A DNA stretch of 64,000 nucleotides from Lytechinus pictus. Taxonomy: Eukaryota. Shown in pieces: positions 1 to 20,151 of the stretch. The notes under the pieces are model-generated. The model had not been told where the DNA came from, did not search any database, and saw nothing but the letters and a program-made list of their open reading frames with translations. Within the stretch, counting starts at the first letter, position 1. Each line of letters opens with the position of its first letter. Position numbers and translations under genes: made by a program. The DNA lies in contig NC_087254.1 of the NCBI RefSeq assembly GCF_037042905.1, positions 10,664,001 through 10,728,000 of the forward strand, read 5' to 3'.

Positions 1-839
1 GGTTGGTGTGAACGCGAGATACGGACAATTTCGAAGAAGTCTACTCCAGAAATTGAAACCAGAAGAAAACAAAATCTTCAATTCTCTGAAGAATCGCCCG
101 AACATCCCTTCCCCCATTCACCCAGCAGTTAAGTATACCAGGTCACCGTATTCCAATTGCCCAGATGACGTAGGTTTACCCGATAACTAATGAGTGAGAA
201 TTAATTCTTAATTGAATTCATGTCCTAAAAATAGCATTGACTTTTGCGCGTCAAATTAATTGTCACTTTTTGAGTGTCTGGGCATTGATTAAGATCCCTA
301 ATTCAATTTTAAGTGACCGTGTACCCTGGGCACGTTAAATTACAAATTAATGATCAATTGATACATTTATTTGATATATTTCAAAACCCGTGAAAAGTGG
401 GGCTGGTGTATATAGTGTTTTTTGTTGGTAGGCTAAGGATGGTACAGCTTTCATTTGCCTTATATACAAGCATTGCTTTTCTTGGCAAGTCAGTTAATTT
501 ATCTTCTATATTTGTTATAAATTGTCATTGAACTGTCTATATTGTTTTGAATATGTACTATTAAATAAATCTAACTCTAAATCTAAAATCTACCTCATTT
601 TTGTTTTTACCTTCAATAAAAACTTACTGAAAATGAAAGGCTCCCTTTAAATTCCATTCACTCCGCTCCCTCGCTCTCACCCCTCTACCTACACCCCAGC
701 CCCCCCCCCCCCCCCCCGTCTTCACCTCACCCCCTGTCACGAAAGTAGACCGATTACAAGACTGTCTGCATTCACAGACAGCATCCAAATAAATATTGTG
801 AATGGAGGATCATAGTCCCCGGTACTACACAACAGCTCA

Positions 840-945
840 ACGCTGATTGGCTGGATGTTCAGGCAAGCGGGTCAATGAACAGTAGTGGCCCCGCCCACCC
901 GATTACCCATAAATTCGTCTCCCAGCCTGCGAACGGCATCAGTTA
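840..945 (+). promoter_or_regulatory. Putative core promoter of the plus-strand secreted-protein gene
   Basis: Reverse CCAAT box (ATTGG 846-850), GC box (CCCCGCCCAC 888-897), TATA-like CATAAA at 908 and Inr-like TCAGTT at 939-944, in canonical order and spacing. Confidence 0.5.
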
Positions 946-1260
946 GATTTTCTTTCAATTTCGAAGAGCAATCGCTATTTTTTTTAGACATCATAAAGCA
1001 TCACCATCAACCCTGCATCCTTTTCAATCTTTACTATACCATCTTCATCTAACTTGTGAGGAATCGGGAGGGAAAGATTGATCGAAAGCCCATCTTTTGC
1101 TGCAAGTTTGATAGAGAGGTTGCATCGATCTGAAGCTGTGAATTTTCAGAGTTGTTTTGGCTCGGAGTTTGTTGGTCAACAATACTACTATCGCACTCCA
1201 CGTGGGTTTACTCGCGCGTTTGGAGAGACCGGTACACGTGGATATCTCGTCATATAACTG
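941..1260 (+). other. Putative non-coding first exon (5' UTR) of the secreted-protein gene
   Basis: Follows the Inr, has no ATG that I could find in about 320 nt, and ends at a consensus donor CTG|GTAAGT (1261). Its link to the acceptor at 10482 is inferred. Confidence 0.5.
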
Positions 1261-2867
1261 GTAAGTTGAACCGGTATATGGGGTCTTCTTGATATTCATT
1301 TCCCCCCATTTTGTACTAGAATGAGAAGGGACTGATATTGGGAAGGGGAATATATAGGGAAGTGATACTTTTAACAGATTGTAATGATAATTATCGAACC
1401 ATATCCATGATATACCACATACTGGGTAAGGAAACCTGACTATAAATTTTAGTAATTCGATATTCGGAGTGGATGGGGGTAACAAGCAAATACATTACGA
1501 CGAATGAATTACAAATCTGTTTATGTATTTTTGTTATGATATTTTTAGATTTATTTCTTCTGTGTATGACTTAAAAAGCCATCAACAGCTTTTAAAGACA
1601 ACACTCAAACGGCGAACGGCATCAGATTTTCTTTAAAAAAATTCGTTGTATGTCTCCACTCATGGACCAATAAACCTGTATCTTATATTTTGTATTTAGG
1701 TATATATATATATATAATTATTTTGAAGATTGCAATAGATAGGCTATAATAAAACGGAGATCAGTGGAAAGAATACCTATTTTTTTGTCTCTATCACTGT
1801 TCTTCCATCGTGTTCATGAAGGCCTGTTATATTATGAATAGGCTTAGTGTCAGTGCATAAATGGCATCTCTGTTTAAGTTTGATGGTGTGTTTTCACATA
1901 GAAATTTGCATGCATTTTTAATGTTCGTAATAACGGGGAAAACGGGGGAGAAAATTTGACTCCACAACAAGTTCAATTTCATAAATCACACCGGTATTAC
2001 AATGCAAACTTCAACAAAGTCATTTGTTAAATAAGAAAGTTGCTGCTCTTTTTGATGCAGTTTCGCTAATTTTAACAACATTATGTATGTGAATATATAT
2101 ATTACCATATTTTTACTGGTCATAAATCGAACAAAGATCCCGCCAACATCAGGAAAATTGACGGAGAACAGTAGCTTAACCAAATAACTAAAATAATGTT
2201 GTAAAGAATCGGTAAAATGGAATTGAGATGCAAGGAAGCACTTACCCTAACGACAAAAAAAAAAGAAATAAGGAAAAAAAATAATGTTCTATAACCAAGC
2301 CTGTGTAACTTTGGAAATTCTGTGATGGATACTCAACAGTTTACCAAAAGGGGCAAATCAAAGTTGGTCAATAAATTGAGAGGAAAATCAGTTTTAAATA
2401 TTGCAATGACTTTGACATTCCAAAACTTACCGGAGAAAAATGTAATACCAGGGGCCTGAGACCAAGTTTTGAAGAGGGGTGCTGGTTTGTAAAAAACATA
2501 ATAATAAAAAAAAGCAAAAACAGTTGACCACCTCGAACCCCCCCCCCCCCTCAAAAAAAGTGTCCACTCCTATTATGAAGGTGATTTTGGTTTTTGAAAA
2601 ATGACTAGCAAAAAATGGATTTCGCTGATTTCGAGGGAGAGCTGTCTATGGTGTATGGCATACGCAGGACCCCCAGAGAATGGGGGGGGGGGGGGGTCTT
2701 CAGTAATCAGCACCCTCGCCTCCCTTGGCCATGAAGGGTATATAATGCCTAATCAAAATCGGTTAGCAAATGGAATAAAAATAAACATTTCGATTGGACA
2801 GAAATTGGCATAGGCCTAGTTGATATAATATTTAATTACGAATACGATCATCAAATGAGGTTCTTAA

Positions 2868-5294: not shown

Positions 5295-5650
5295 TCCCAC
5301 AGTGTGTGCCACAGTGTGGAACATAGCATGAAATCACCTTCATGCTGTTAAATTTGAGCAATTCAACAGCATGAATCACATAGTCGACCATGTCAACACA
5401 TTGTGAACAGTCATACTATCGAGGTGTCAACAGTGTCAAAATAATCTTCACACTGTTGAATTTGAGCATTATAACAGTGTGAATAATATTTTCACAGTGT
5501 AGTCCACTATGTGAACAGTAACACTGTCAAGGTATCCACAGTGTGAAAATGTCTTCACACTGTTGAATTTGAGCATTATAACAGTGTGAATAATATTTTC
5601 ACATAGTCCACATTGTGAACACACTGTGATCACACTGTATGACACCGTGT
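5295..5650. repeat. Degenerate tandem repeat, about 110-bp unit rich in CACA/TGTG
   Basis: TCTTCACACTGTTGAATTTGAGCATTATAACAGTGTGAATAATATTTTCACA occurs twice exactly, plus a diverged third unit. Confidence 0.75.
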
Positions 5651-6861
5651 TCTTGCCAGCAGGGATATAGGCATGATGGCTCAGTGGTTTAGGATCCGTC
5701 TCACGATGAAAATTAGGTCGTGGGTTCGATCCCCTTCAGAGACATGATATTAATGTACCAAAGACATATATTGTAAACTTGGACCTTTTTCTTTCTAGCT
5801 TATTATTCATTTATAGGGTCGGATGGGAAAAGTTAAACACATCCTATTATGCACAGCGGCTGGTGGAGTAGCTTTACAACTGACATGGTCGCCTTTTTTC
5901 AGACAGTGCATGCTATCTGTAGGTCAATCGTTGGTACATTTCCTTCTTTTTCAATAAATCAGTTGATAATTTGACACGACTGATGCCAATAACCATTGAC
6001 ATCTTCAATTTTTATCCCTGTATGCCATCGTCAATAACAGTTGGTTATCGACGCCATATCCCACTAAACGAGGTGGTTACACTCTTGGGGCAAAATACTC
6101 CCATGATACATGTATACTTGATGAAAGGTAATCCGGATATTAAAATACAATTAGATTAATACGATTAAAGCATCGAAATGAATATAGACGTGATGTACGA
6201 AAACGATTTTTTTTTCGTGACGTGGTAGTTAAGTAAATCCACCGATCATTGGTATATATCAAATGTGACGTAGTAAGTCGATAGGCTTATGGAAAAGGGA
6301 TGATATACGCGTTCATTATGTGAAAACGAATGTTTTCCGTTTTAAAATCTTTCATTCGACAACGTCGTGAGTTAAATGTCGGTAGTTTCGTCACTGATAT
6401 ATAGATGTCGTCACAAATGCCAGAGAAGGTTCAATAATTACATAGCTGATCGAATTGAGACGATTTTTTCGTATACGGTAGTAATTATAACGGCGATTAG
6501 AGGCACTGCTGATGTTTAGCAAATAAAAAAAAGTGAATAGTGTGCATGCCATCTAGAATTACCATGATAATCTTTGATAAAGGATATTTTGCCAATATTT
6601 TTTATGATTCAATGATACATTTTAACCACGCTTGATAATGATTTCGCAATAACTTGGTATTGTGTACCTGGGTTTTTTTTAAGGATATTTGGGGGAAGTT
6701 TCGTTATTCAAGAAACTCTATGGCCAAAGGCCAATTACTTTGTGGTCGATATGTTACATACCCGGAATTGAAGAATATGCCTTTTAATAAAACATTTAAA
6801 AAAAATCATCAAAATTCAATTCTCTGATCTTCTCAAAAGATAAGAAACATATCTCTAGTCA

Positions 6862-7134: not shown

Positions 7135-9980
7135 GCTCTAGTCTATTTGAAAACGTACTGTAATCATTTCCTTTGACGATATCTAAGGATGGGGGTATAA
7201 ATATTTGAAAATAAGTGAACAATTTTTTATTTCATTTATTTGTACATTTGTACTGTATCATTTTTTTTTTTTTGGGGGGGGGGTATTTTTCTATACTTAC
7301 TGAAAACGAAACTAATCTACATTACCATAATGAGACTATATGTGATGATCAAACTGTTGCATTATGGGTAATTAATCCGCGCTGTTATGAAGTTCAGTAA
7401 GACTTAAATCAGGTTGGTGCTTTACAAGTCATTGGCCTCGTCATGGTGCCTTTAATTTACATTATCTGTATTGGTTCTGTCAGTCTTGCTTGATTTAAGA
7501 GACAGCCAGCAGGGGTCAGATTAAGACTCATCGTACCAATCAATTTCATTGGCTCTTGTCCAAGTTTGATTGGGTGGATGTCATAAATGTTTTCCCCAGT
7601 CCTTGAGCGAGATGATAGATTGTGTAACGGCTCAATTTTGTACACGCCACCTTAGCAGGGTATCGACAACTTCATCTGTGACTGCATGGTGTCTTCGGAG
7701 GAATTGTGTTTCTTGTAAGGTGTTTCAGTGGGCGGGGGGGGGGGGGTCATCCGAGATATAGTTGTCCTCTAATATAATCTCTAGGATAATGTTTATGCTG
7801 AGGAGTATTGTCTGGTTGCGTTAACGAAGCGAGAAAGAGAGATACCCGTTCCGAGGATCCTATTTTTTACAATAAGCCCGCTCTAAAGCCCCCGTTTTTT
7901 GTCTCGCCCGCGGCACATACCTACCACTTTTTTGGTAGAGTACCCCCCCCCCCCCGGATCACTGATACAACTAGCTTTTTTAGGTGAAACCTAGCATTTG
8001 GAAAGGACCCGAAACAATTTTGGTTCAGGTATCAAAGAAATGTGGCTGTACTGTGTGTGCAGACTGGTGCTGCTGTACGGTATTGATTCTTGAGGTCAGA
8101 TAATATCTTAATGAGCCAAATGTCGTCATCAGCCGGTAGCAGACTATCGTACAATCGGGAGTTTAAAATCAAAATGTTCCTCCTCCCTCCATTCATTTCA
8201 CGCCTTTGAAAATTGTCAGAAACGAAACACATCGCATTGAATGCATGAAAAGATCTTGGCGCGTGATTCTTTTTTGGCACCTAGCCTCAGACTGAATTGA
8301 CACGACGATCATGCCGAGTGATGTTTCATGATCAGTATTAATCAGTTGCATCGCAATGATCTTTAGGATATTGTTGGTGTTGGAATAGACACGTGGCGGA
8401 CGTGCCTGATGACCACCTGTAGATTTTTGTAGGGTTGCTCAAATCACGGTGTTAAGAACTCCGTCCTCGTGGGCTTCTATCCGCGAAAATGTGGCGTTCG
8501 TGAGGTCGCTTACTTGTGCCCTTTTCAATCCACAAATATGTAACCACATCTAAAAATACCCCATCACACTTTTGTGATTGATAGGGAAAGTTCAACGTCA
8601 GGACGCATTTTTTCAGTGTCGACTCTTTTTTTTTGCGGTGGCTCATTGTCTGCCTTCCCCGTTGCGACGGTGAAAGGCCTCTTTATAGCGTTATCACAAC
8701 TTTTCACACTTTTGAGGGTATGTCGAGAGAGCCATAAATCGAAAAAAAGACCCCCAACCATTCAAATATAATCATTATTAGCAAAATACACTCCAGACGG
8801 TGAAATGGAATAGATAGTATTCACTCATGAAATTGTGAACTCAAGGCCTTCTACGATAACCTTTGTTGCAAATTTGTTCAGTCATCGAGATTTTTGTTAT
8901 CTTTATTTGTCATTTTTTCAAACATAGACTTTAAATATTTTGCCAAGGAAAACGCCATGGCCATGTGAACATGTCGGAAGTGTCTTTTTTGGCGACTTGA
9001 CCCGAACTACATGTACATTCGGAGCAAAGATGAGAAATTACGATTGGAGCAAAGTTCCACCTGGAACGATACATGTTTTCTATTTAAGCAGTTAAGGCAA
9101 TGTCTGAAACTAAATACGACCTATGTGATTATGCCATATGTGACCCCCTCCACCCTGAGCCTCCCCCTCAATACCCTCGCAGACTGAAATATCACTCTCA
9201 TCGAATGTTCCGTTACAAAGCGAAAAGACCTCGATGTATTTTTGTTTTCGGGGGGATTCGGACGTTCATATTTCATTTTTTTAAGTCTCTGCTTCGAATC
9301 TATTAGCTGAACAGAATAACTCTCTTTTATTGAAACGTGCTAAAATTACTTTATAATTCAAATCCTGGGGTTCAGTCTAACAACAACAATTATGTCTATA
9401 CAAAGGCGCCATTCCTGGTCATGACATACAATGTTAGTACACAAAGAGATCAAATGGTCAAAACACGCATCTGAGCATTCACTCGGCGCCACGAATCCGG
9501 GCACACACATGGAATTCTCTAATTTGTTGAATCTACGTCACACTATAGAGCTATTACAATTACATAACACCTTCTTGGTCTTAAATTACGCTTTCTTCAA
9601 TCAAATATACTGCTTATAATCATACTGACTATTTAACCTTAAAATCATATCACATGAACATAACTTAAATACAATTTCGATAAAAATGTGTAATGCTCAC
9701 CTGAACGAAGGATGAAGCGGGGTGAAGGTCACGGCTAATGAAGCCTGCCACCAACGACCCCCTTACGCCCCCATAAATCCGCGTATTTCATGCAACTCAT
9801 GGATTGGATATTCATTCAATTTTTAATCAGTAAGTGACCCTTATCACCCTCCCCCTTTAAGTTGTGTAATGAATACACTATCTGAAGAATATCAAGGCAA
9901 ATTATTTCGCCAAGCTGGTATAACCAATTACTTAGGAAAGATTCTTCGTCTATAAGTGAATCTGTCTTAGTAGCAGACTT

Positions 9981-10260
9981 ATAATAATAATACCAACATG
10001 CTTATATAGCGCATATCACTGCCAAATGCGTCCCTATGCGCTTAATTGGATATTATTACCCCGGCTTTAGCCTCGCAGCCTTTTACAGCGCGGTGGCATT
10101 TCAAGGAATAAATTCCTGCCAGGTACCCATTTACCTCACCTGGGTCGAGTGCAGCACAATGTGGATTTCTTGCCGAAGAAAATTACGCCATGGCTGGGAT
10201 TCGAACACACGACCCTCTGATTCAAAGTCCGAAGACTTATCCACTGGGCCAAAACGCTCC
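9981..10260 (-). mobile_element. tRNA-derived SINE, related to 51735-52093
   Basis: Reverse-strand B box (GGGATTCGAAC on +), shared GGTACCCATTTA..CACCTGGGTCGAG core and (TAA)n tail; a further head fragment lies at about 10290-10375. Confidence 0.8.
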
Positions 10261-10552
10261 ACAAGACAACATAAATTACTCTTGGGTCTTTGACGATGGC
10301 ATGGCCGAGAGTGGTTTTAAACCCACAACCTCACGACCACGAGTCAAATGCTCCAACCACTAGACCACACGACCCTGCGGACTAGGTTCATAAATGTCAT
10401 GATCATGAAATGTAAAACATATTGTAATCCAACCATGAAATACTTAATGAATTCAATTTCACTTTTATTTCATTGCAAACAGACCGCTTTGGAACTTCTG
10501 ATAAGCAATTTGAGAAAAGGGTTTCTTCAGGATCCTGGTTACGTAATCGACC

Positions 10553-10945
10553 ATGATGCCGACCACCAGCATACGTTGTCAGTGGCTACTGATCAGCATC
10601 GGGACAGTCCTCATCATCCCCGCCATCAACCTTGCCTCAGCCGGTCATGCTAAACACAGAGGTTCGATGTCATTAGACAGGCGAGGAGGTCACAATCAGC
10701 CTTCATCATCAGACTCGACGTCCTCGTCGTCATCCTCTGAAACGCTCCCAATCAATCCCGACCACCAAGTCGAAAATGAAGAGCATAATGTCATAGCGAG
10801 TAATAGCACATCACCATCGCTTCCTCTGATTCAAGATGGCGGTGAAGTCAAGTTGCCCAGAGGATTTAAAATAATCGCTCTCGACGAGGACAATAAACCA
10901 TTTATCGTCATTCCAAACATGCATCATCTTTTGGAAAACAATAGT
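10553..10945 (+). CDS. Uncharacterised secreted prepropeptide, coding exon 1 (aa 1-131: signal peptide, Ser-rich pro-region)
   Basis: Acceptor ttttatttcattgcaaacag at 10482. In-frame TAA 9 nt upstream of ACCATG. Hydrophobic N-terminus WLLISIGTVLIIPAINLASA ends in an A-x-A cleavage motif. Phase-0 donor AGT|GTGAGT at 10946. Confidence 0.8.
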
Positions 10946-13900
10946 GTGAGTATCAATTTTTAGAATATTTTCCATATACTGTTTCATATTTTGGAACGTG
11001 GAAGACACAAGTAGTCAACAAATACCACGGTAGGAATGAAAGAAGTTGTACTTTATTCAGTAAACTTAATAAATTATGCCACCATTTCGAGGGGATTGAT
11101 TATCGGATATTACACACCATTTTTGAAAAAAATTGCGATAGAGCAAAGCGAGCGACCCAACAAATATTAAATAATGTGACTCAAAATCAGTTTAAACTTT
11201 GGTTTAAATTTTCAACGGGTACAACTTAATGTGTATTTTGGGGGTGCAAGAAGGGTAGGAGCGTATCTGTTAAATGCATAATTAGGCTGAAACGCTCTGA
11301 AACGAAGTTGAATCTCGGACAAAGTGGTATTCCTAATTTTTTTCTTAATTTTACGTCTACTCCCAAATAAAATTTCGTCAAAGAAAAGTCTTATTTTTCG
11401 TCCGCGGATCAACGTCACAAGTGAAATGAGCTCACATGGCTGACAATTGCTCACAGCTACTGGGAGATCGAATGATTTATTTTTATCCGAGTAATCAAAT
11501 ATTGGAATCGTTGATATGTACCCGTCTAAGATATCACGACCTCTCGCTGTTTTAGAATGGTATATTGTAATACAAGCTGGACTCTCTTCCGCGTATGATT
11601 GAGTAATGTTTTCATAAACTCATTTGCCATATTATATATAGCTAAGTTTGCATTTTCTTAAGAAAGTTGTTGAATCTAAAGATGCGACCGAGACTGTGTA
11701 GCATGTCTGGGGATTATTATATCAGGCTTATATTGAAGGAGATCATCTCAAGCGTTCATTGCGATGTAAAGTGATAGGTTGATCATGTCAGGACTTTAAT
11801 ACCCGACCTGAAAACCCCAATACCCGGCCTACATGCTCATATAGCTATACAATGTTTGATCAAACCCTTCATTGGTAATTGTGCCATGATGCAAAAACGA
11901 ATAACGATTGGCAGCTCCGACCTATCCTTGCCTCGAAGTCTTATATACCTTATAACATGAGATAAATGATATGATATTGTGTTTTCATCGGTAAATAAGC
12001 TGTCTGGCCTGATATGTCTGGATGGAGGCAATGGCACGGTTTTTTTCGAATGTCATTTTCAAAATCATCAGACAACCTTCACCTCTATCAAAATCTTGTA
12101 CGCTGCACTTTAGCCTGGATTTTTAAAAAATGATTCAAACATATTGAAACAAATATGGCGAAACTCCATTAATAACCTAGTAAGGGATAATCAAAAAATA
12201 ATTTTAAAAATTTGACTTCAAATGCGAGTAGCTCACCCATTTCTTTGGATGAAAAAAATCCACAAAATGCTATTTTCTCAGAAAGAGAAGGGAGTAAGGA
12301 TGAGTGTATCTGTATCATCACATACATTATTCCGTAAGGGGTTTCATGATAAAAAAAATTGTAGTCATATTTAACCGTTTATGAAACTAAGTCACAGCAC
12401 ATTACAAAAGGGGCAGTTGCTTGCATGTGACGTATGTGACATATCAAACCAACTCTTTACAATCAATTATCACTTTGCGTACATAGTTCTCTCACTATGA
12501 TTATACTGACTCCGCCCCTGTTTCCCCATACAACCAAATGGGCACCTCCGGCCTCCGTTTTATTCAAAACTGATAACATTTGAGTGAAAATTATTTCAAG
12601 ATCAATACAACTTACCAAAATCATATAAACTATAAACGGGATAGTCAGTGTGGATGAAGTATAGCATCGTATATAAGTAAACATTCTGAATAGCAATTTG
12701 AAACTATCTAGAATATCGAGTATGTTGAATATTTTCACTCAGAGATCATCGGTTTTGACTAAAATGGAGACCGGAGGTGTCCATTTGGTTGAATGGGGGA
12801 CAGGACGAGTATAGGCGGCGTCGGGGTACTTTAAAAAGGGACAATGCGGTCTGGCTATATGTTTTTGTATCGGTTAAATTATACGATTTACGGAGGTAAA
12901 TTTACACGAACTATATCTCTCTTCTTTTGCTCTTCATTTCTTCCTATCTTCCCTTTTATCCTAATTTATTTTTTAACAAATAATTTCTTCCCAAAAAAAT
13001 CATAAGAGGGGGGGGGGGCGCCCCTACCCTGCTGTAGTGCCGCCCCAGTAACTTTGGATCGGCATGTTGTTACAAATGTCACTCACGCCCGTCTTTCGTC
13101 AGTTGGTACATTCGGAAGGAGCAACTGACATTAAAAACTACTTAAAATCGGATATGTTTGGCGTCTGATAACTCAAATCCCTAATGGGAATAAAAAGAAA
13201 GGGCACGCTTACATTTCACAAAAAATTGCCCTCTCCAGAATCATGACCGAACTTTTTGGTAACATTCGGATTTTTGTGTTGAACAATGAAAGGTGAAAGA
13301 AAGGTATGGCATATTTAGGTTCACGTTGAGGTTCCCAAAACACTTCCCATGCTGGTGGACATGATGACATACATAGAGATATTCCAACAAACAGGCATCT
13401 GTTTCGTTTAAAGCCACTGCCACTTTGAAAATCATCATCATCATCGCAGGGACTAAACACTTCTCAAATGGTTCCCGTTTGCGAACATAATACGCGAACC
13501 GTTTCCCCAAGTCTTGTTACAATAACAAACGTAAATTTCTACCACAAAAAAATTGCCATTTGGCCAATCCTATTAAAGGATTTCAGTAGCTTTTAACAGT
13601 TATTGCAAATTTGTTAATATAACAAGTTTTATGAAACGGGCCCCTGGTTCCGTACACTGGATGCAACAATTTGATCACGTGTTCTTGTAAGATGATTTAT
13701 GCCCAATTAATAATCTTCTACTCTTTACGACATTGATACCACAAAATAATTATTGGTATGAATGGTATTGTCTTAGCTCTAAACGATATGAATGAATTGA
13801 AATTATTACCAAATCTCACTGTCAGGTACAATTACGTGGATTATTACATCACATATGAACAAAACATTTGGTAATTGGAGCTAACATAATAGCAAGATGC

Positions 13901-16709
13901 TAATCGAGGTTAGCCCCAAATATTGTCATTATTGTTTAAACAATAATTTTAACTAGATCACAATATTGTACATCAATATTGCCTATATCTTTCTTTCACC
14001 TTTGGATATATTCTTATCTTGATTTTAAATTTGAATAACATTTTGGGGATGTTCCGTACGACATTCCGTCCGAGGTGGATCTTTCTATACTAGTCGATAC
14101 TGTTTATCGACATTAATGATCGGAAATGTAACAAGTGGCTTTAATTAAGGTATTAATTTTCTTTCATGTTTAGTGTAAAATGGATTGTTTTATTTGCTGC
14201 GGGTGGAAAAGTGCTATTTCCTTACCAGACACGAGTTGGGCTACTGGATGCGCATGTGTGAAAGGGTGTGTGTGTGTGTGAGGGTGTGTGTGTTGAAAAA
14301 AAGGTGTGCGAGTGTGTTAGGGTGTCGGGGTGTGTGTGGTGGAGGGCGCTATACTGCCGCTCATTCGAAACAGTCTGTTGTCATTCATTGTTTGTATTCT
14401 TTAACATTGCTTTTGGAAATATACTTATTATTGAGTAGGTCACAATGTCTATGTCTAATCTATTTTAATTTGGCGTTAACTATAACTATTTCAAATATGT
14501 GTAGTCTTATTGGCGGTATCAGCCAATCAAAACAATTTTCCCCGGATTTGAAAGACAACAATTGTAGGTGTAAGAAATCACTGATCACTAAGGATTTTGT
14601 ACAAATACGTGTTGCATATATTTAGGATGTCGCAAGTTTGATATAAGCCAACGGCGTATTGTTCGGTGGTACGGGCAATTGGAAATCTTTGCCCATCTAT
14701 TAAAAAAATGTAATTCATTGCATATAAAATTTAAAATCACAACTAATAACAAAGTACTTCCAATACTTAGTCGATTGAACTCACATGACAAATATCGATA
14801 TTTTCTTTTCGCTCACTTGCATTAAACAACTCTGATATTCTAAGGAATCAAATTTCAGCTCCATCAGATTTCATGCCTCAGAGCGCTACTGGTGCAAGCA
14901 TTTTCCGTTTTTGTTCAATCTCTTGGGATATTTTGTCTTACTAATCACCGGTGGGCATCATTATTTTTGCTCTTACGTGTACCTACGTTGACGTTAGTTG
15001 TGACGTTTGGTACAAGGGTTATAGCGGGGGCAGGGAGACGAACATCGGATTCAACTTGAATGAACCACGCATTGCCTAAGTAATATTGATTCTAATCATT
15101 TGAAAATCGTTATCTTCGGGATTTCCAAGATGTCGAGCTCAACTGTTCACTTTTAATTAGACTTTTGCTTTGAAGTTAGCCAAACCTGACAAGGACTAGA
15201 CGAAAGATGTTAATCTTTCCACGTGTGTTATATTTTTCTTCTTCAAAACGGCGAACATTCCCTTGCATTTCATTGCGCGTATGAATAAAAACACGATTTG
15301 GGTTGCGATAATGCGTGATGGTTGAAGCAGTGGTGGCCCTTGGGGAAAACCGAAGCGTTAGATTAGATGCCTTTTCATCATGTTATTTGGTATGGTTTTG
15401 AACGAAGCAGTATGTTGCCGAGACAACATTCCGCCGGTGTCTGTCATTGGTTGTCTTCTTCATACGCGGTTTTCTCGTCGTTGGCATGTCCTGTTATTTC
15501 GTGAAAGTTCACAATGAGTTCATACCCTCTCATGTGGATGTCCTATTAAGATTTCTCTTGAATTTTCTAGAGAAAAAGTGGAGGATTGTCCCGGCATCCA
15601 GGGGTCAGACTGTGTCTGTATGTAGATTCTATTGTCCATGCAGAAATGAAATCCAGGTTATCGTAATTCCCCGACCACATGCTCTACATGGCTTTTACCA
15701 TGCTTGACCACATCCACAAGATAGTTTCTTCCAAATTTGTTAAATCTGGTTCTGAATGCAAAAACAGTTCAATTTTTATTGAGTAATTCTCTCAGAAAAA
15801 AGTAATGTGTTTTTCTGTTACATAACTTGTTTAGTCAGGTTCTAAATGCGGGAAAAAGAAATTGTCTCATTTTCATTAAGCGATTTTCTGAGAAAGAATC
15901 AAAAGTATCAAATATATATATCAACAACTAGAACAAAGACAATAAGCACCTGCATTCAGCAACACAGAGGATTTTTCGTCTTCTCAGATATTAATTGGGG
16001 GTAGAATCGGTGATATACCCCATGACGCGCCGATGCTGCCCAATATAGACCTTCGTCAATCTGAGATTTGAGTGGATAAAACGTTATACGATAGACGTTG
16101 ACGTGAACTTTTCATTGACGGCAATGAGTAATATAAATTAGTGGCACCATAAGTCCAAATGGTGTAAGACTGTTGTTAGTCACGGCAAGACGGTATAACT
16201 GACCGTCTGCTTTCGTGTCCTTCCTGTGTTAATAACTTAAGGCAAACATTTGTTTGTGTCATGAAAAGGAGAGAAGAAAATGGGATAAGTAATATGGAAT
16301 GTATCTATTTGTGAAGGAAGGAGGTCAATAAACGACTGGATTAGGTCATGCATAAGCAGCTATTAAAAGTGTCAGTAACCTTAAAATGTCCTTTACTGTT
16401 AAAGAATAAAAAGTGCGCGATCCCTGATCATGAATGATTAATGTGATGCCGTGTCGTTGATTGTGATACGAGGCGCAAAAATATGAAAATCAATTCTCCT
16501 GACGTTTCACCAAGAAGTCGTAGTCTTCCATAAGGATCCGATAGAAAAAGAAAAACAAAATTAAGAAAGCTTAAAAATCAAGATATTTAGTACAAAAAGA
16601 ATTACCACATAAGAATGCTTTTAAAATGCGTATACATCGATACACACTACGATTCAAGCATTTTCACTTAATTATTGTATGGTAAAAGAGCAGTACATGA
16701 TATATGTAT

Positions 16710-16795
16710 CCCAAGATGCCGTCGGCGGGAATCGAACCCCAAGTCTTCCCTGTGTTTAACAGGCGCCCTAGACCACTCGGCCACGTCACCTCCAC
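16710..16795 (-). mobile_element. tRNA-like SINE head
   Basis: Minus-strand GTGGCCGAGTGGTCTAGGGCG and GGTTCGATTCCC boxes; cloverleaf is imperfect. Confidence 0.55.
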
Positions 16796-16935
16796 ATAAA
16801 TACTGGTAACAGAAATTTAATCAATCAATTTGATTGTAGGCTCAATTTGAAATTGTGTCAGAACAAATGGACAAAACGATAAAAGTTAATTTTTTGTATT
16901 TACCTTCTCATGACATGTTTTATCTCAATTTACAG

Positions 16936-17160
16936 GATTTGACGAAGCTGCTGAAGTCTGCTCTGAGAGAGGCTCATCGGATCAAGCGTTCGCCATCGTA
17001 TTCACCAGCGGAAACGTCGTCATCGAGAGGATCGAGGCGATCGGCTTGCAGATTCGAATACCAAACGACTGTAATCAGAGAAGGGCACTGTATTCGATTT
17101 GGAGATTTTCCCGCCTGTTTATCCGGAGATCAATTGTACCCTTTCGCACGTGATTGCTAG
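16936..17160 (+). CDS. Uncharacterised secreted prepropeptide, coding exon 2 (aa 132-205: RIKR furin site, 4-Cys C-terminal peptide)
   Basis: Acceptor ttttatctcaatttacag|GAT is phase 0, matching the 10946 donor. Reads DLTKLLKSALREAHRIKRSPSYSPAETSSSRGSRRSACRFEYQTTVIREGHCIRFGDFPACLSGDQLYPFARDC*. Confidence 0.8.
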   Translation, partial: DLTKLLKSALREAHRIKRSPSYSPAETSSSRGSRRSACRFEYQTTVIREGHCIRFGDFPACLSGDQLYPFARDC

Positions 17161-20151
17161 CCGATAGATGCATCTTTGGACAAGCAGTCATTTCGGAAGA
17201 CGGTTCACGTATCGCGTATACAGGGACGTTGGTGAGCCACGCGTCGAAGATATCTTATGGGAAGCACTTCTGCAAGGTGCATTTGATTCATGCGTATTAC
17301 CGAGGACCCTTTGGCATGTTGAGGGGAGACTGTGTATTCCACTCATCGTGGACATTTCTTTTTATATGCAGATCAGTATGATTCGCGTTTGTACAAAGAA
17401 AGATTTTAAGCTGTATTTAAATCAAGGGAGGTTCTATATGTTGATAGTATTATGTACATATTTGGAGAGTTATGTATTGAGATGAATTGAGAAATTGAGC
17501 AAGGAGAGAAAATCAACAAATTGACTGCAATTGATTTTTAAAAAGAAATAGATTTTAATTTGATGTAGAGTTTAAACAGAAGGTACTGACTTGTCGGTGT
17601 TTTATTATCACCTGTAATCGATAACATGATCTAGTAGAAAGATTGAGAAAGTCTGACTGAATTCAGCATGATCGGTAGATTATTACAGTTCACCAATAAT
17701 ATACGATACCACAGGTCCTAAAATGTATTCACCATCGGATAACACACATGCACAATTTTTTACCGAGGGAATGTTTCAGAAATCTGATCGTAAATTTGCG
17801 ATTGATTTGATAGGCAACTTAAATATGGCATGCCAAATGGAATCCTGACTAATTTTATCTTGGGGCTGTCGCATAATACTGAGTTCCCACTGTCACTACT
17901 TGCATCACGATTCAAACGGCGAACTTAATCGTTCAGTAGTCGTAGTGATCTTGACGGATCGTATCAGATCAGTAGTGGCAATCGTATTGATCATATCAAA
18001 CAAATTTGAATGGTTCACAAATTTTCGCGATCAGTTACAAAAGGCCAATCGTGAATTTCTTAAAGGATCGCACGACAGCGGGAACGAGGTTTTAAGAATT
18101 ACGATCAAACGCAACACAAAATATTGAACGCAACTTGATGTTCAACTTAAGAAACGTGCGTATTATGGACTTTGATTGATTTCTTGAGTTGCATTTAATC
18201 ACAGCTCATTATGAAACTGGTCCCACATCACCTGAGAGTGAATAATGTTAATGATATGTATTTTCATTAAAGCGGAGGAAAGATTGATCCCATTTAGAAT
18301 ATAGGAATATAGGATCTTATGTAGGAAAAGCAGTTTACATGAGCGCAGACCTGTAATGTCATTCGGTATTCATTATTTCAAACGTCGAGTTATGAAGTGC
18401 TTTGCGATGGATAAACCACCCAAAGTCACTCCATTTCCGTTCGTTAAAGAATGATCAACACGTCAAATGATATCAATCACTCAGCACAATGTGAGGGATT
18501 TTTCAATCCTCGACGCACGACGGATTTAAGAACATAGTATAATGTATTGCCAAATGCCCCACATGACAATGAACAACCAAGAAGTCTTTGTCGAAAATTG
18601 GTGAGTCAAGGCGGCAGTTTCGTCCTAGAATGTGTACAAACGACGCACATGTATTTGTGCAATTTTTCGTCAGCTCCGGAACTTAAGACGAAGTTCTTCA
18701 ATTATCGACAAAGACCTCCCAGCTGTTTACTTTCGATTGACTGACATTTTCAATACACTTACTAAGGACTTGAATCCGTTCTGCGTCGCGGGGTGAACAT
18801 TCCCTAGTGGTAGACTACCACGAAAGCAATGACGACATTGACGACGTTTTCGGATACTGAAAACATCAAAACACATTCATTAGTGTGCTAAAAAGATGAC
18901 GGAAGGATACGTTAAAGGTCGAGCATTATAATTACTGACAAACAAACCAGTGTTTGTGTTCCTGACCAGACAATTATATGGTTATCATTCATGCAATTGG
19001 CGACGGCGAAGAGTGAAGTTTGTGGATGTTTTTATTGAATCCGATTGTTTCCATGGCGATAGAACGCACACGTACATTCTCATTGAACAAGGGGATACAT
19101 TACGCTTTCCAGCGTCAGTTTGGCCTCCCTGATTGAAACAACTTGAAGCAAATAAAATACATATGTATTGTGTTTGATAATGCTTAAGTCACACTATGGT
19201 AACGAACTCCATATCGATCCAAGCAATTACGTTCTTGCGAGCGGTATATCATGGTTCAGTTTGGAAGTAGTGTGTCTGCGGCATTTCAAAGTGTTTGTTT
19301 GTGTAATATTCCACTAGCCACGTTATAAATTACTGTATTCGGAATATTAACTGTCGTCAGTTACTTCATGGATGTTGTATTTCATGGAATATTTGTCATT
19401 CTGTATGTATTTCATATTTTGTTGTGTCTCATGAGTATTAGGAATTCAATTACTGCCATTTTCCTACATGCAGATTCCGCTACTTAAAGTACTAAATGTA
19501 TATTTCGCATTGTTCGTGATATGTGAATTTACATATTGTATTCTAATATTTTATGTTGAATAAAATGAGAACATTGATGCCTTGAATTTGACCAATGTTG
19601 TCTTCACTTCAGGAGCGAGGTGTGTGTCAAGAAGGCCTATTCTAAAAAAAATACCCATCAGTAAAAGGATGAGTTTGTTTTTAATAATTGTCTAAAATTA
19701 TTTTTAGGCCAGTAATGAGAGCTAGAAAGCATAGATTCAGTTTTCTGATCATGTAGACCTATATTTCATTTATCATGAAATAGTATTTGAATATTTATAA
19801 GTTATCGAATAAATCACATTTGCATACGATAAAAGTACCGTTAACATTAAAAAATAGGGTATCGATATTTATTTCATAACTCGTTTTGCAATGTGAATTG
19901 ATTTTTCTTTTATAAGTTTGAAGGATGAAGTGAATTTTATTTTTCTCGCGTTTTGAAATGGACGGATGTGATTTTCCCCTTTTCTGCAAATGTGTAAAAT
20001 TATGATCGTTTATCCTTACGTGTGTGTGTATATATTATCTATTGATTGTTATATAAGTTTATTTTTTATTTTACAGATTAAAGTAATATTTATGATTGAT
20101 AAAAGAAATGAAAATGACTGCCTGTGTATTCTCTCACTTGTTTTTCTTAAA

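What the first reader, a model, noticed from the sequence alone, without database searches (positions are those of the whole stretch)
10553..17160. Orphan 205-aa prohormone-like gene releasing a 39-aa four-cysteine peptide
Seen: two ORF-track fragments join through a phase-0 GT-AG intron (10946-16935) into one protein. It has a signal peptide (aa 1-30), a low-complexity pro-region, RIKR (aa 146-149) and RGSRR (aa 162-166), then SACRFEYQTTVIREGHCIRFGDFPACLSGDQLYPFARDC with C-x13-C-x8-C-x12-C ending exactly at the stop. Established: R-x-K/R-R is the furin consensus, and this layout is typical of peptide hormones and growth-factor ligands. Inference: the mature product is a two-disulfide signalling peptide. 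I cannot match its Cys spacing to insulin/relaxin, cystine-knot hormones, EGF, ALKAL or defensins, so it may be an undescribed ligand family.
Basis: partly seen in the sequence, partly recalled or inferred. Interest (0 to 1): 0.85.

Follow-up and report, generated by a model that had tools for sequence, protein, structure and literature searches.

The report
Sea-urchin secreted four-cysteine peptide precursor
This is a real, spliced and expressed sea-urchin gene for a 205-residue secreted precursor with a conserved furin-type cleavage site and a C-terminal two-disulfide domain; it is conserved across sea urchins, matches no described protein family, and is most likely an uncharacterised signalling peptide.

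Summary
The two ORF pieces (10553-10945 and 16936-17160) join through a phase-0 GT-AG intron into a 205-aa protein. Transcript contigs from two public studies carry exactly this junction. Orthologues annotated only as "uncharacterized protein" exist in Lytechinus variegatus, Strongylocentrotus purpuratus and Diadema setosum. The intron sits at the same position in the two loci I could fetch.

The prohormone-like reading is partly supported.
- Conserved in all four species: the signal peptide, a D-[KR]-R site, two N-glycosylation sequons, R-x-K-R (aa 146-149) and all four cysteines.
- RGSRR occurs only in Lytechinus. The conserved product would therefore be the 56-aa fragment after R-x-K-R, not the 39-mer.
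- The "pro-region" is not all low complexity. Its core (aa 101-149) is as constrained as the Cys domain (dN/dS 0.07 vs 0.08), while the linker between them evolves almost neutrally (0.85).

No homologue outside sea urchins was found by sequence. Pfam and PDB gave nothing. An AlphaFold model of the 56-mer is all-beta with moderate confidence, which argues against an ALKAL relationship even though, from my memory of human ALKAL2, the Cys spacing is identical.

Two weak AlphaFold DB matches to small uncharacterised proteins hint at wider relatives; I could not follow them up. Function is inferred, not shown.

The parts
938..1261 (+). Putative non-coding exon 1 (5' UTR); boundaries approximate
   Evidence: The S. 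purpuratus 5' exon and promoter region (L006 2562-3034) aligns to window 768-1249 at 69% identity. GTAAGT lies at 1262 and a TATA-like cataaat near 908. The X15 contig has 787 nt before the 10945|16936 junction, which equals 463 nt (10483-10945) plus 324 nt. The exon 1-2 junction itself was not seen directly.
10483..10552 (+). 5' UTR part of exon 2, after the acceptor ...tgcaaacag|ACCGC
   Evidence: The acceptor position is conserved with the S. purpuratus model. An in-frame TAA at 10544-10546 lies 9 nt upstream of the ATG, so the N-terminal extension of the S. purpuratus model cannot exist here.
10553..10642 (+). Signal peptide, aa 1-30 (n-region MMPTTSIRC, h-region QWLLISIGTVLII, c-region PAINLASA, predicted cut before G31)
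   Evidence: It is the only hydrophobic segment in the protein. LASAG is invariant in four species. No SignalP was run.
10643..10684 (+). Conserved N-terminal segment GHAKHRGSMSLD followed by the dibasic site RR (aa 43-44; KR in S. purpuratus)
   Evidence: H, R, G, D and the second R are invariant in four species. Whether it is cut out as a separate peptide is unknown.
10685..10852 (+). Variable Ser/Thr-rich acidic region (aa 45-100) with the conserved N-glycosylation sequon N84-S-T
   Evidence: 34% identity to Diadema; dN/dS 0.23 against S. purpuratus; the sequon is present in all four species.
10853..10945 (+). First part of the conserved core module (aa 101-131, LPRGFKIIALDEDNKPFIVIPNMHHLLENNS), including the second conserved sequon N129
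   Evidence: dN/dS 0.07 against S. purpuratus. The whole core, aa 101-149, is 65% identical to Diadema.
10946..16935 (+). Phase-0 GT-AG intron, 5990 nt
   Evidence: Its removal is shown by transcript contigs. The same intron position occurs in S. purpuratus (4680 nt) and Diadema (21737 nt).
16936..16989 (+). Second part of the core module (aa 132-149, predicted helix DLTKLLKSALREAH), ending in the furin-type site RIKR (16978-16989)
   Evidence: R-x-K-R is present in all four species as RIKR, RTKR, RNKR and RIKR. dN/dS 0.07. The helix comes from a low-confidence model.
16990..17043 (+). Ser-rich linker (aa 150-167) containing the Lytechinus-only RGSRR (17026-17040)
   Evidence: dN/dS 0.85 against S. 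purpuratus; 28% identity to Diadema; RGSRR is absent from S. purpuratus and Diadema.
17044..17157 (+). Four-cysteine domain (aa 168-205), C-x13-C-x8-C-x12-C, ending on the last Cys
   Evidence: All four Cys and 24 of 38 positions are invariant in four species. dN/dS 0.08. The AlphaFold model is all-beta, with pLDDT about 82 over 56-mer residues 31-50 (aa 180-199).
17158..17160 (+). TAG stop codon
   Evidence: The stop follows the last Cys directly in Lytechinus and Diadema. S. purpuratus reads on for 7 codons (VGRRNFG).
17161..17999 (+). 3' UTR (continues about 590 nt beyond 17999; end not mapped)
   Evidence: The X15 contig matches 16936-17999 without gaps and has 592 nt more.

Best explanation
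A single-copy, three-exon gene (two coding exons) of a Lytechinus sea urchin encodes a 205-aa secreted precursor.

Shown:
- The mRNA is spliced as proposed.
- The protein is conserved and under purifying selection across sea urchins that differ by about 50% in protein sequence (Lytechinus, Strongylocentrotus, Diadema).
- The constraint falls on two modules, a core (aa 101-149) and a four-Cys domain (aa 168-205), separated by a nearly neutrally evolving Ser-rich linker.

Inferred mechanism:
1. The signal peptide is removed after Ala30 and the protein is N-glycosylated at N84 and N129.
2. A furin or proprotein convertase cuts after the invariant R-x-K-R (aa 146-149).
3. This releases a 56-aa C-terminal peptide: a flexible Ser-rich tail plus a compact all-beta domain held by two disulfides.
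4. That peptide acts as an extracellular ligand of hormone, growth-factor or cytokine type.
5. The conserved core of the N-terminal fragment serves as a folding or latency partner, or is a second active product.

In Lytechinus only, a further cut at RGSRR could trim the product to 39 aa.
For: - Splicing and expression.
- Orthologues and the shared intron position.
- Conserved features: one N-terminal hydrophobic segment with an A-x-A motif, R-x-K-R, D-[KR]-R, two sequons and four invariant Cys.
- Selection by segment: dN/dS 0.07 (core), 0.85 (linker), 0.08 (Cys domain).
- Single copy in the genome.
- Model of the 56-mer: all-beta, mean pLDDT 67.6 and about 82 over the central part.
- Peptide charge: net +1 (56-mer) or -1 (39-mer), so it is not cationic, and it evolves slowly; both fit a receptor ligand better than a defence peptide.
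- Established knowledge: R-x-K/R-R is the furin consensus, and a C-terminal disulfide peptide behind such a site is the usual layout of pro-hormones and pro-growth factors.
Against: - No cleavage, secretion, receptor or expression site has been shown.
- The segment before the cleavage site is as constrained as the peptide itself. That is unusual for a discarded pro-region and also fits an uncleaved two-module protein.
- Two total-RNA runs of the same species showed no reads on the last exon in the roughly 6% of reads sampled, so expression is restricted or low.
- The structure model rests on three sequences and is only moderately confident.
- The acidic Ser-rich region and the restriction to sea urchins would also fit a skeletal-matrix protein.
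Confidence: 0.55

Rival explanations
1. It is an uncleaved, or only incidentally cleaved, two-module secreted protein with a structural or matrix role, for example a skeleton, tooth or extracellular-matrix phosphoprotein. The Ser-rich stretches would be phosphorylated or O-glycosylated spacers.
For: - The core module (aa 101-149) is as constrained as the Cys domain.
- The Ser/Asp/Glu-rich region and linker are 30-50% Ser+Thr.
- Homologues were detected only in sea urchins, as is true for many sea-urchin skeletal matrix proteins (own knowledge).
Against: - R-x-K-R is invariant in an otherwise changing neighbourhood.
- The Ser-rich parts are the least conserved parts.
- There are no repeats and no matrix-type domain such as a C-type lectin.
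- The protein is small and single-copy.
Confidence: 0.25
2. It is a divergent invertebrate relative of the vertebrate ALKAL/Augmentor (FAM150) ligands of the ALK/LTK receptor kinases.
For: - The layout is similar: signal peptide, variable N-terminal region, and a C-terminal domain with four conserved Cys (ALKAL features).
- From my memory of human ALKAL2, its four Cys (111, 125, 134, 147) have the same C-x13-C-x8-C-x12-C spacing. Two other remembered positions, Cys66 and His100 in helix alpha1, agree. The spacing itself was not checked with a tool.
Against: - No Pfam hit to FAM150, even at E up to 10, and no PDB sequence hit.
- The model of the domain is all-beta, whereas ALKAL2 is described with alpha helices. 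No ALKAL chain appeared in the PDB fold searches.
- Between the cysteines, hand alignment to the remembered sequence shows almost no identity.
- A dedicated published search found no AUG outside vertebrates and did find a Jeb-like ALK ligand in Strongylocentrotus.
Confidence: 0.04
3. It is a host-defence (antimicrobial) peptide precursor.
For: It has a signal peptide, a pro-region, a furin site and a small disulfide-rich C-terminal peptide. Sea urchins have lineage-specific Cys-rich antimicrobial peptides (own knowledge).
Against: - The peptide is not cationic: net +1 for the 56-mer, -1 for the 39-mer.
- It is under strong purifying selection (dN/dS 0.08) and is single-copy. Defence peptides are usually cationic, fast-evolving and multi-copy.
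Confidence: 0.06

Closest known systems
Furin/proprotein-convertase-processed pro-hormones and pro-growth factors with a C-terminal disulfide peptide (a kind, not one homologous family)
   Same: Signal peptide, a pro-segment, an invariant R-x-K-R, and a small Cys-stabilised C-terminal product that ends at or near the stop codon.
   Different: No sequence or fold relationship to any named member. The pro-segment core is as conserved as the peptide. Cleavage has not been shown.
ALKAL1/ALKAL2 (Augmentor, FAM150; Pfam PF15129 recalled from memory)
   Same: Small secreted protein with a variable N-terminal part and four conserved C-terminal cysteines. The Cys spacing is apparently identical (from memory).
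   Different: No profile match. Predicted beta fold rather than helices. A 19-residue Ser-rich linker (150-168) follows the furin site and precedes Cys1. ALKAL is reported as vertebrate-only (PMC7851593).
Described echinoderm neuropeptide precursors (Spnp/Arnp series, e.g. Spnp11/Arnp11 with a C-terminal Cys-rich polypeptide; PMC4772807)
   Same: Echinoderm secreted precursors with a dibasic site followed by a roughly 55-aa Cys-containing C-terminal polypeptide of unknown receptor.
   Different: Those described have two or six cysteines and different lengths. None of the passages returned by my keyword search of that paper describes a 205-aa precursor with four cysteines. No sequence from this gene was found in any held paper.
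AlphaFold DB cluster representatives A0A6P7GBD8 (94 aa, 'Uncharacterized protein LOC114340126') and A0A2C9LKV8 (156 aa, unnamed)
   Same: They are the best fold matches to the Cys domain. Match 1: 39 residues aligned, 31% identity, rmsd 1.5 A. Match 2: 34 residues aligned, 26% identity, rmsd 1.8 A. Foldseek probabilities are 0.99 and 0.98. In the 94-aa protein the matched part lies at the C-terminal end.
   Different: E-values are 0.26 and 0.36, so not significant. The organisms are not given by the tool and the sequences could not be fetched. I could not check whether the cysteines and a cleavage site align.

Membership tests
ALKAL/Augmentor (FAM150) | Four conserved cysteines in a C-terminal domain of a small secreted protein | tested here: met
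   Four invariant Cys at aa 169, 183, 192 and 205. The ALKAL feature is documented. The identical spacing in ALKAL2 is from my memory only.
ALKAL/Augmentor (FAM150) | Sequence match to the FAM150 domain profile | tested here: not met
   hmmscan against Pfam-A at E up to 10 on both exon products and on three orthologues returned no FAM150 match. phmmer against PDB chains returned no ALKAL.
ALKAL/Augmentor (FAM150) | Alpha-helical Augmentor domain | tested here: not met
   The AlphaFold2 model of aa 150-205 has strands only (mean pLDDT 67.6). No ALKAL chain appeared in the Foldseek or VIA searches of the PDB. ALKAL2 helices are named. Model confidence is moderate, so this is not final.
ALKAL/Augmentor (FAM150) | Binds and activates the ALK/LTK ectodomain | not testable with these tools
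   The sea-urchin ALK ectodomain could not be obtained as one unaltered protein. No complex job was sent.
Furin-processed secreted peptide precursor (kind) | Cleavable N-terminal signal peptide and no other membrane segment | tested here: met
   A Kyte-Doolittle scan shows one hydrophobic segment centred on aa 15-25, followed by the conserved LASA|G. SignalP was not available.
Furin-processed secreted peptide precursor (kind) | Conserved R-x-K/R-R site in front of the product | tested here: met
RIKR, RTKR, RNKR and RIKR in four species.
Furin-processed secreted peptide precursor (kind) | The product is actually released and is bioactive | not testable with these tools
   This needs peptidomics and bioassays.
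Fibronectin type II domain | PROSITE-type FN2 pattern (recalled from memory) and Pfam fn2 profile | tested here: not met
   The recalled PROSITE pattern has similar Cys spacing (13 / 9-11 / 12-14) but does not match as a regular expression. There is no Pfam hit and no FN2 chain among the fold matches.

The most novel reading that the evidence does not exclude
The four-Cys beta domain is the founding, so far unnamed, member of a wider animal family of small secreted two-disulfide ligands. On this reading the sea-urchin genes and the small uncharacterised proteins behind A0A6P7GBD8 and A0A2C9LKV8 (an insect and a mollusc, judging from memory of the accession series) are relatives. It would then be an undescribed, anciently conserved peptide signalling system whose receptor is unknown.
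Probability: 0.2. Interest if true: 0.7.

Novelty: new variant of a known kind. Interest (0 to 1): 0.42.

Why it matters
Sea urchins are a main model for deuterostome development and for neuropeptide evolution, and their catalogue of secreted ligands is incomplete. This precursor is conserved, strongly constrained and single-copy. It has a clean furin site and a compact disulfide domain that fits no known family, which makes it a concrete candidate for a new ligand.

It can be tested directly: synthesise or express the 56-mer, localise the transcript, and knock the gene out. Lytechinus pictus has CRISPR lines and may be the species of this window.

If the weak matches to small proteins of other phyla are real, the family would be much older than sea urchins. 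If instead the protein proves to be a matrix component, it adds a sea-urchin-specific skeletal protein. Either way, the gene models now labelled 'uncharacterized' would gain an annotation.

Tried and rejected
- Pfam on both exon products and on three orthologues: only chance-level hits (IMUP, BNIP3, LUD).
- PDB sequence search with the whole protein and with the Cys domain: chance hits only (thymidine kinase, UBE2G2; E about 1).
- Exhaustive phmmer of the last-exon product against 1.84 billion representatives: only the Diadema orthologue.
- Two profile searches of the 5.8-billion-protein set, full length and C-terminal half: only sea-urchin sequences.
- ESM Atlas feature searches on the whole protein, aa 96-205 and aa 164-205: no usable hit.
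- AlphaFold model of aa 96-205: pLDDT 44, unusable.
- Fold searches with the 56-mer model against PDB (Foldseek), about 48,000 PDB representatives (VIA), Swiss-Prot models and the ESM Atlas: only generic small beta-barrel similarities (SH3, Tudor, Hfq, RimP), Z at most 3.0, E above 1.
- ALKAL homology: considered seriously because of the remembered Cys spacing, then rejected as the main reading (see rival explanations).
- Fibronectin type II: rejected.
- Literature: no paper mentions LOC586555, the two AlphaFold DB accessions or peptide strings from this protein. My keyword search (Spnp, 'four cysteine', 'two disulfide') of the starfish/sea-urchin neuropeptide catalogue returned no passage describing such a precursor.
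- Paralogues in the same genome: none.
- Rfam and tRNA scans of the window: nothing.
- Earlier notes of this scan: none for this place.
- No complex prediction was sent, because no binding partner could be named and loaded.
Full report
**What is in the sequence.** Window 10553-10945 reads as a 131-aa open frame starting MMPTTS. Window 16936-17160 reads as 74 aa plus a TAG stop. The first piece ends AGT|GTGAGT. The second is preceded by a pyrimidine-rich tract and CAG. Joining them in phase 0 gives 205 aa.

**Is the gene real?** Yes.
- I laid public data on 12000-17999. Assembled contigs of two runs from two studies start matching exactly at 16936.
- The overhang of the X15 contig reads AACATGCATCATCTTTTGGAAAACAATAGT, which is window 10916-10945, the last 30 bases of the upstream coding exon. 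A contig with the intron removed cannot come from genomic DNA, so the spliced mRNA exists.
- X15 also holds an unspliced intron contig at lower depth. Two raw total-RNA runs showed no reads on the exon in the roughly 6% of reads sampled. Expression is therefore not ubiquitous or not high.
- The gene is single-copy in its 812-Mb assembly.

**Orthologues.**
- A protein search with the first coding exon found a 205-aa NCBI model, [quoted passage not shown]. It is 95% identical and has the same junction NNS|DLTK. The window is therefore from a Lytechinus species close to, but not identical with, that reference (L. pictus is my guess).
- The exhaustive HMMER search with the last-exon product found one further cluster, represented by a Diadema setosum protein.
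- A profile search added S. purpuratus LOC586555.
- I fetched the S. purpuratus and Diadema loci. Both have a GT..AG intron at exactly the same codon boundary, 4680 and 21737 nt long.
- The 39-residue N-terminal extension of the S. purpuratus model comes from translating a 5' exon. In the window an in-frame TAA sits 9 nt before the ATG, and the upstream ATG is absent. I regard that extension as an annotation artefact.
- The S. purpuratus 5' exon region aligns to window 768-1249. A GTAAGT donor lies at 1262. The X15 contig has 787 nt before the junction, which equals 463 nt (10483-10945) plus 324 nt. A non-coding first exon at about 938-1261 is therefore likely.

**Pattern of constraint.**
- Invariant in the four species: the signal peptide core and LASAG, a D-[KR]-R site at 42-44, two N-x-S/T sequons (N84, N129), R-x-K-R, and the four cysteines with their spacing.
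- dN/dS, Lytechinus against S. purpuratus, by segment:
  - Ser-rich region 45-100: 0.23
  - core 101-131: 0.07
  - helix plus R-x-K-R, 132-149: 0.07
  - linker 150-167: 0.85
  - Cys domain 168-205: 0.08
- The protein therefore has two strongly constrained modules joined by a nearly neutral linker, and the furin-type site closes the first module.
- RGSRR lies in the neutral linker and is absent from S. purpuratus and Diadema. The 39-mer cannot be the conserved product; the 56-mer (150-205) can.
- The stop directly after the last Cys is shared by Lytechinus and Diadema. S. purpuratus reads on for VGRRNFG.

**What it resembles.**
- Sequence methods give nothing: Pfam, PDB sequences, ESM Atlas features.
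- The model of the C-terminal half was useless (pLDDT 44).
- The model of the 56-mer reached mean pLDDT 67.6, and about 82 over residues 31-50. It is all-beta, with four strands from just before Cys1 to just past Cys3.
- Searches of the PDB, Swiss-Prot models and the ESM Atlas gave only generic small beta-barrel similarities (Z at most 3.0, E above 1).
- The AlphaFold DB cluster search gave two matches that stand out from the rest:
  - A0A6P7GBD8: 94 aa, named "Uncharacterized protein LOC114340126"; residues 50-88 aligned, 31% identity, rmsd 1.5 A, probability 0.99, E 0.26.
  - A0A2C9LKV8: 156 aa, unnamed; residues 103-136 aligned, 26% identity, rmsd 1.8 A, probability 0.98, E 0.36.
- These two are leads, not findings. 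I could not fetch their sequences, and no paper mentions them.

**The ALKAL question.**
- From memory, human ALKAL2 has its four domain cysteines at 111, 125, 134 and 147, which is C-x13-C-x8-C-x12-C, the same spacing as here. Two other remembered positions agree with the literature (Cys66; His100 in helix alpha1). I did not verify the spacing with a tool.
- The overall layout is also similar.
- Against homology:
  - there is no profile or sequence hit;
  - there is almost no identity between the cysteines;
  - the model is beta, where ALKAL2 is described with helices;
  - no ALKAL chain appears among the fold matches;
  - a dedicated study found no Augmentor outside vertebrates but did find a Jeb-like ligand in Strongylocentrotus.
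- I put this reading at about 4%. It could be settled by a structure or by a binding test with sea-urchin ALK.

**Most likely mechanism.** The protein enters the secretory pathway, loses its signal peptide and is N-glycosylated. A proprotein convertase then cuts it after R-x-K-R. The 56-aa C-terminal peptide carries a flexible Ser-rich tail and a two-disulfide beta domain, and acts as an extracellular ligand. The conserved core of the N-terminal fragment helps folding, keeps the peptide latent, or is active itself.
- Shown: splicing, conservation and the distribution of constraint.
- Inferred: secretion, cleavage, disulfides and the ligand role.
- Main rival, at about 25%: an uncleaved two-module extracellular protein, possibly a sea-urchin skeletal-matrix phosphoprotein.
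- A defence peptide is unlikely, because the peptide is not cationic, evolves slowly and is single-copy.

**Novelty.** The gene models exist in public annotation as uncharacterised proteins, so the locus is not unknown. No family, name, function or publication could be found. It is a new type of a well-known kind, the furin-processed secreted Cys peptide. It is moderately interesting as it stands, and more so if the weak matches to other phyla hold.

Noticed in passing
window 8481-8709, 11609-11988, 15336-15536 (also 5959-6060, 16072-16267, 17269-17537): Non-coding blocks in the introns and flanks of this gene align to the S. purpuratus locus at 71-81% identity, while the surrounding intron DNA does not align. 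They are candidate cis-regulatory modules of the gene.
   Followed up: no
window 13400-13999: A stretch inside the coding intron collects very high summed contig depth (about 2000) and RNA reads whose ends run on into unrelated sequence. It looks like a multi-copy, transcribed repeat element rather than part of this gene.
   Followed up: no
window 17957-17992: A 36-nt piece of the 3' UTR is covered by many RNA reads and contigs that diverge from the window on both sides with consistent flanks (TAATTGCAATGATCGTATCAGGACGTATAA before it, GTAGAAAAATATTGT... after it). This is probably a short repeat shared with an abundant transcript from elsewhere.
   Followed up: no
window about 10180-10330: Just upstream of exon 2 lies a sequence reminiscent of a reversed tRNA 3' half (GGCTGGGATTCGAACAC...). 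It is probably a tRNA-derived SINE fragment. ARAGORN and Rfam call nothing there, and it is absent from the other urchin's contig.
   Followed up: partly
L006 13063-13087 (S. purpuratus): The S. purpuratus orthologue has lost the stop after the last Cys and reads on as VGRRNFG. The G-R-R would allow trimming and C-terminal amidation, a lineage-specific change of the peptide's C-terminus.
   Followed up: partly
window 5397-5621: Tandem repeat of a 107-nt unit, 2.1 copies, in the first intron.
   Followed up: no
window 20000-64000: The rest of the window is poor in long open frames: only four ORFs of 150 aa or more in 64 kb, none examined. No tRNA or Rfam RNA gene was found in the whole window.
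   Followed up: no
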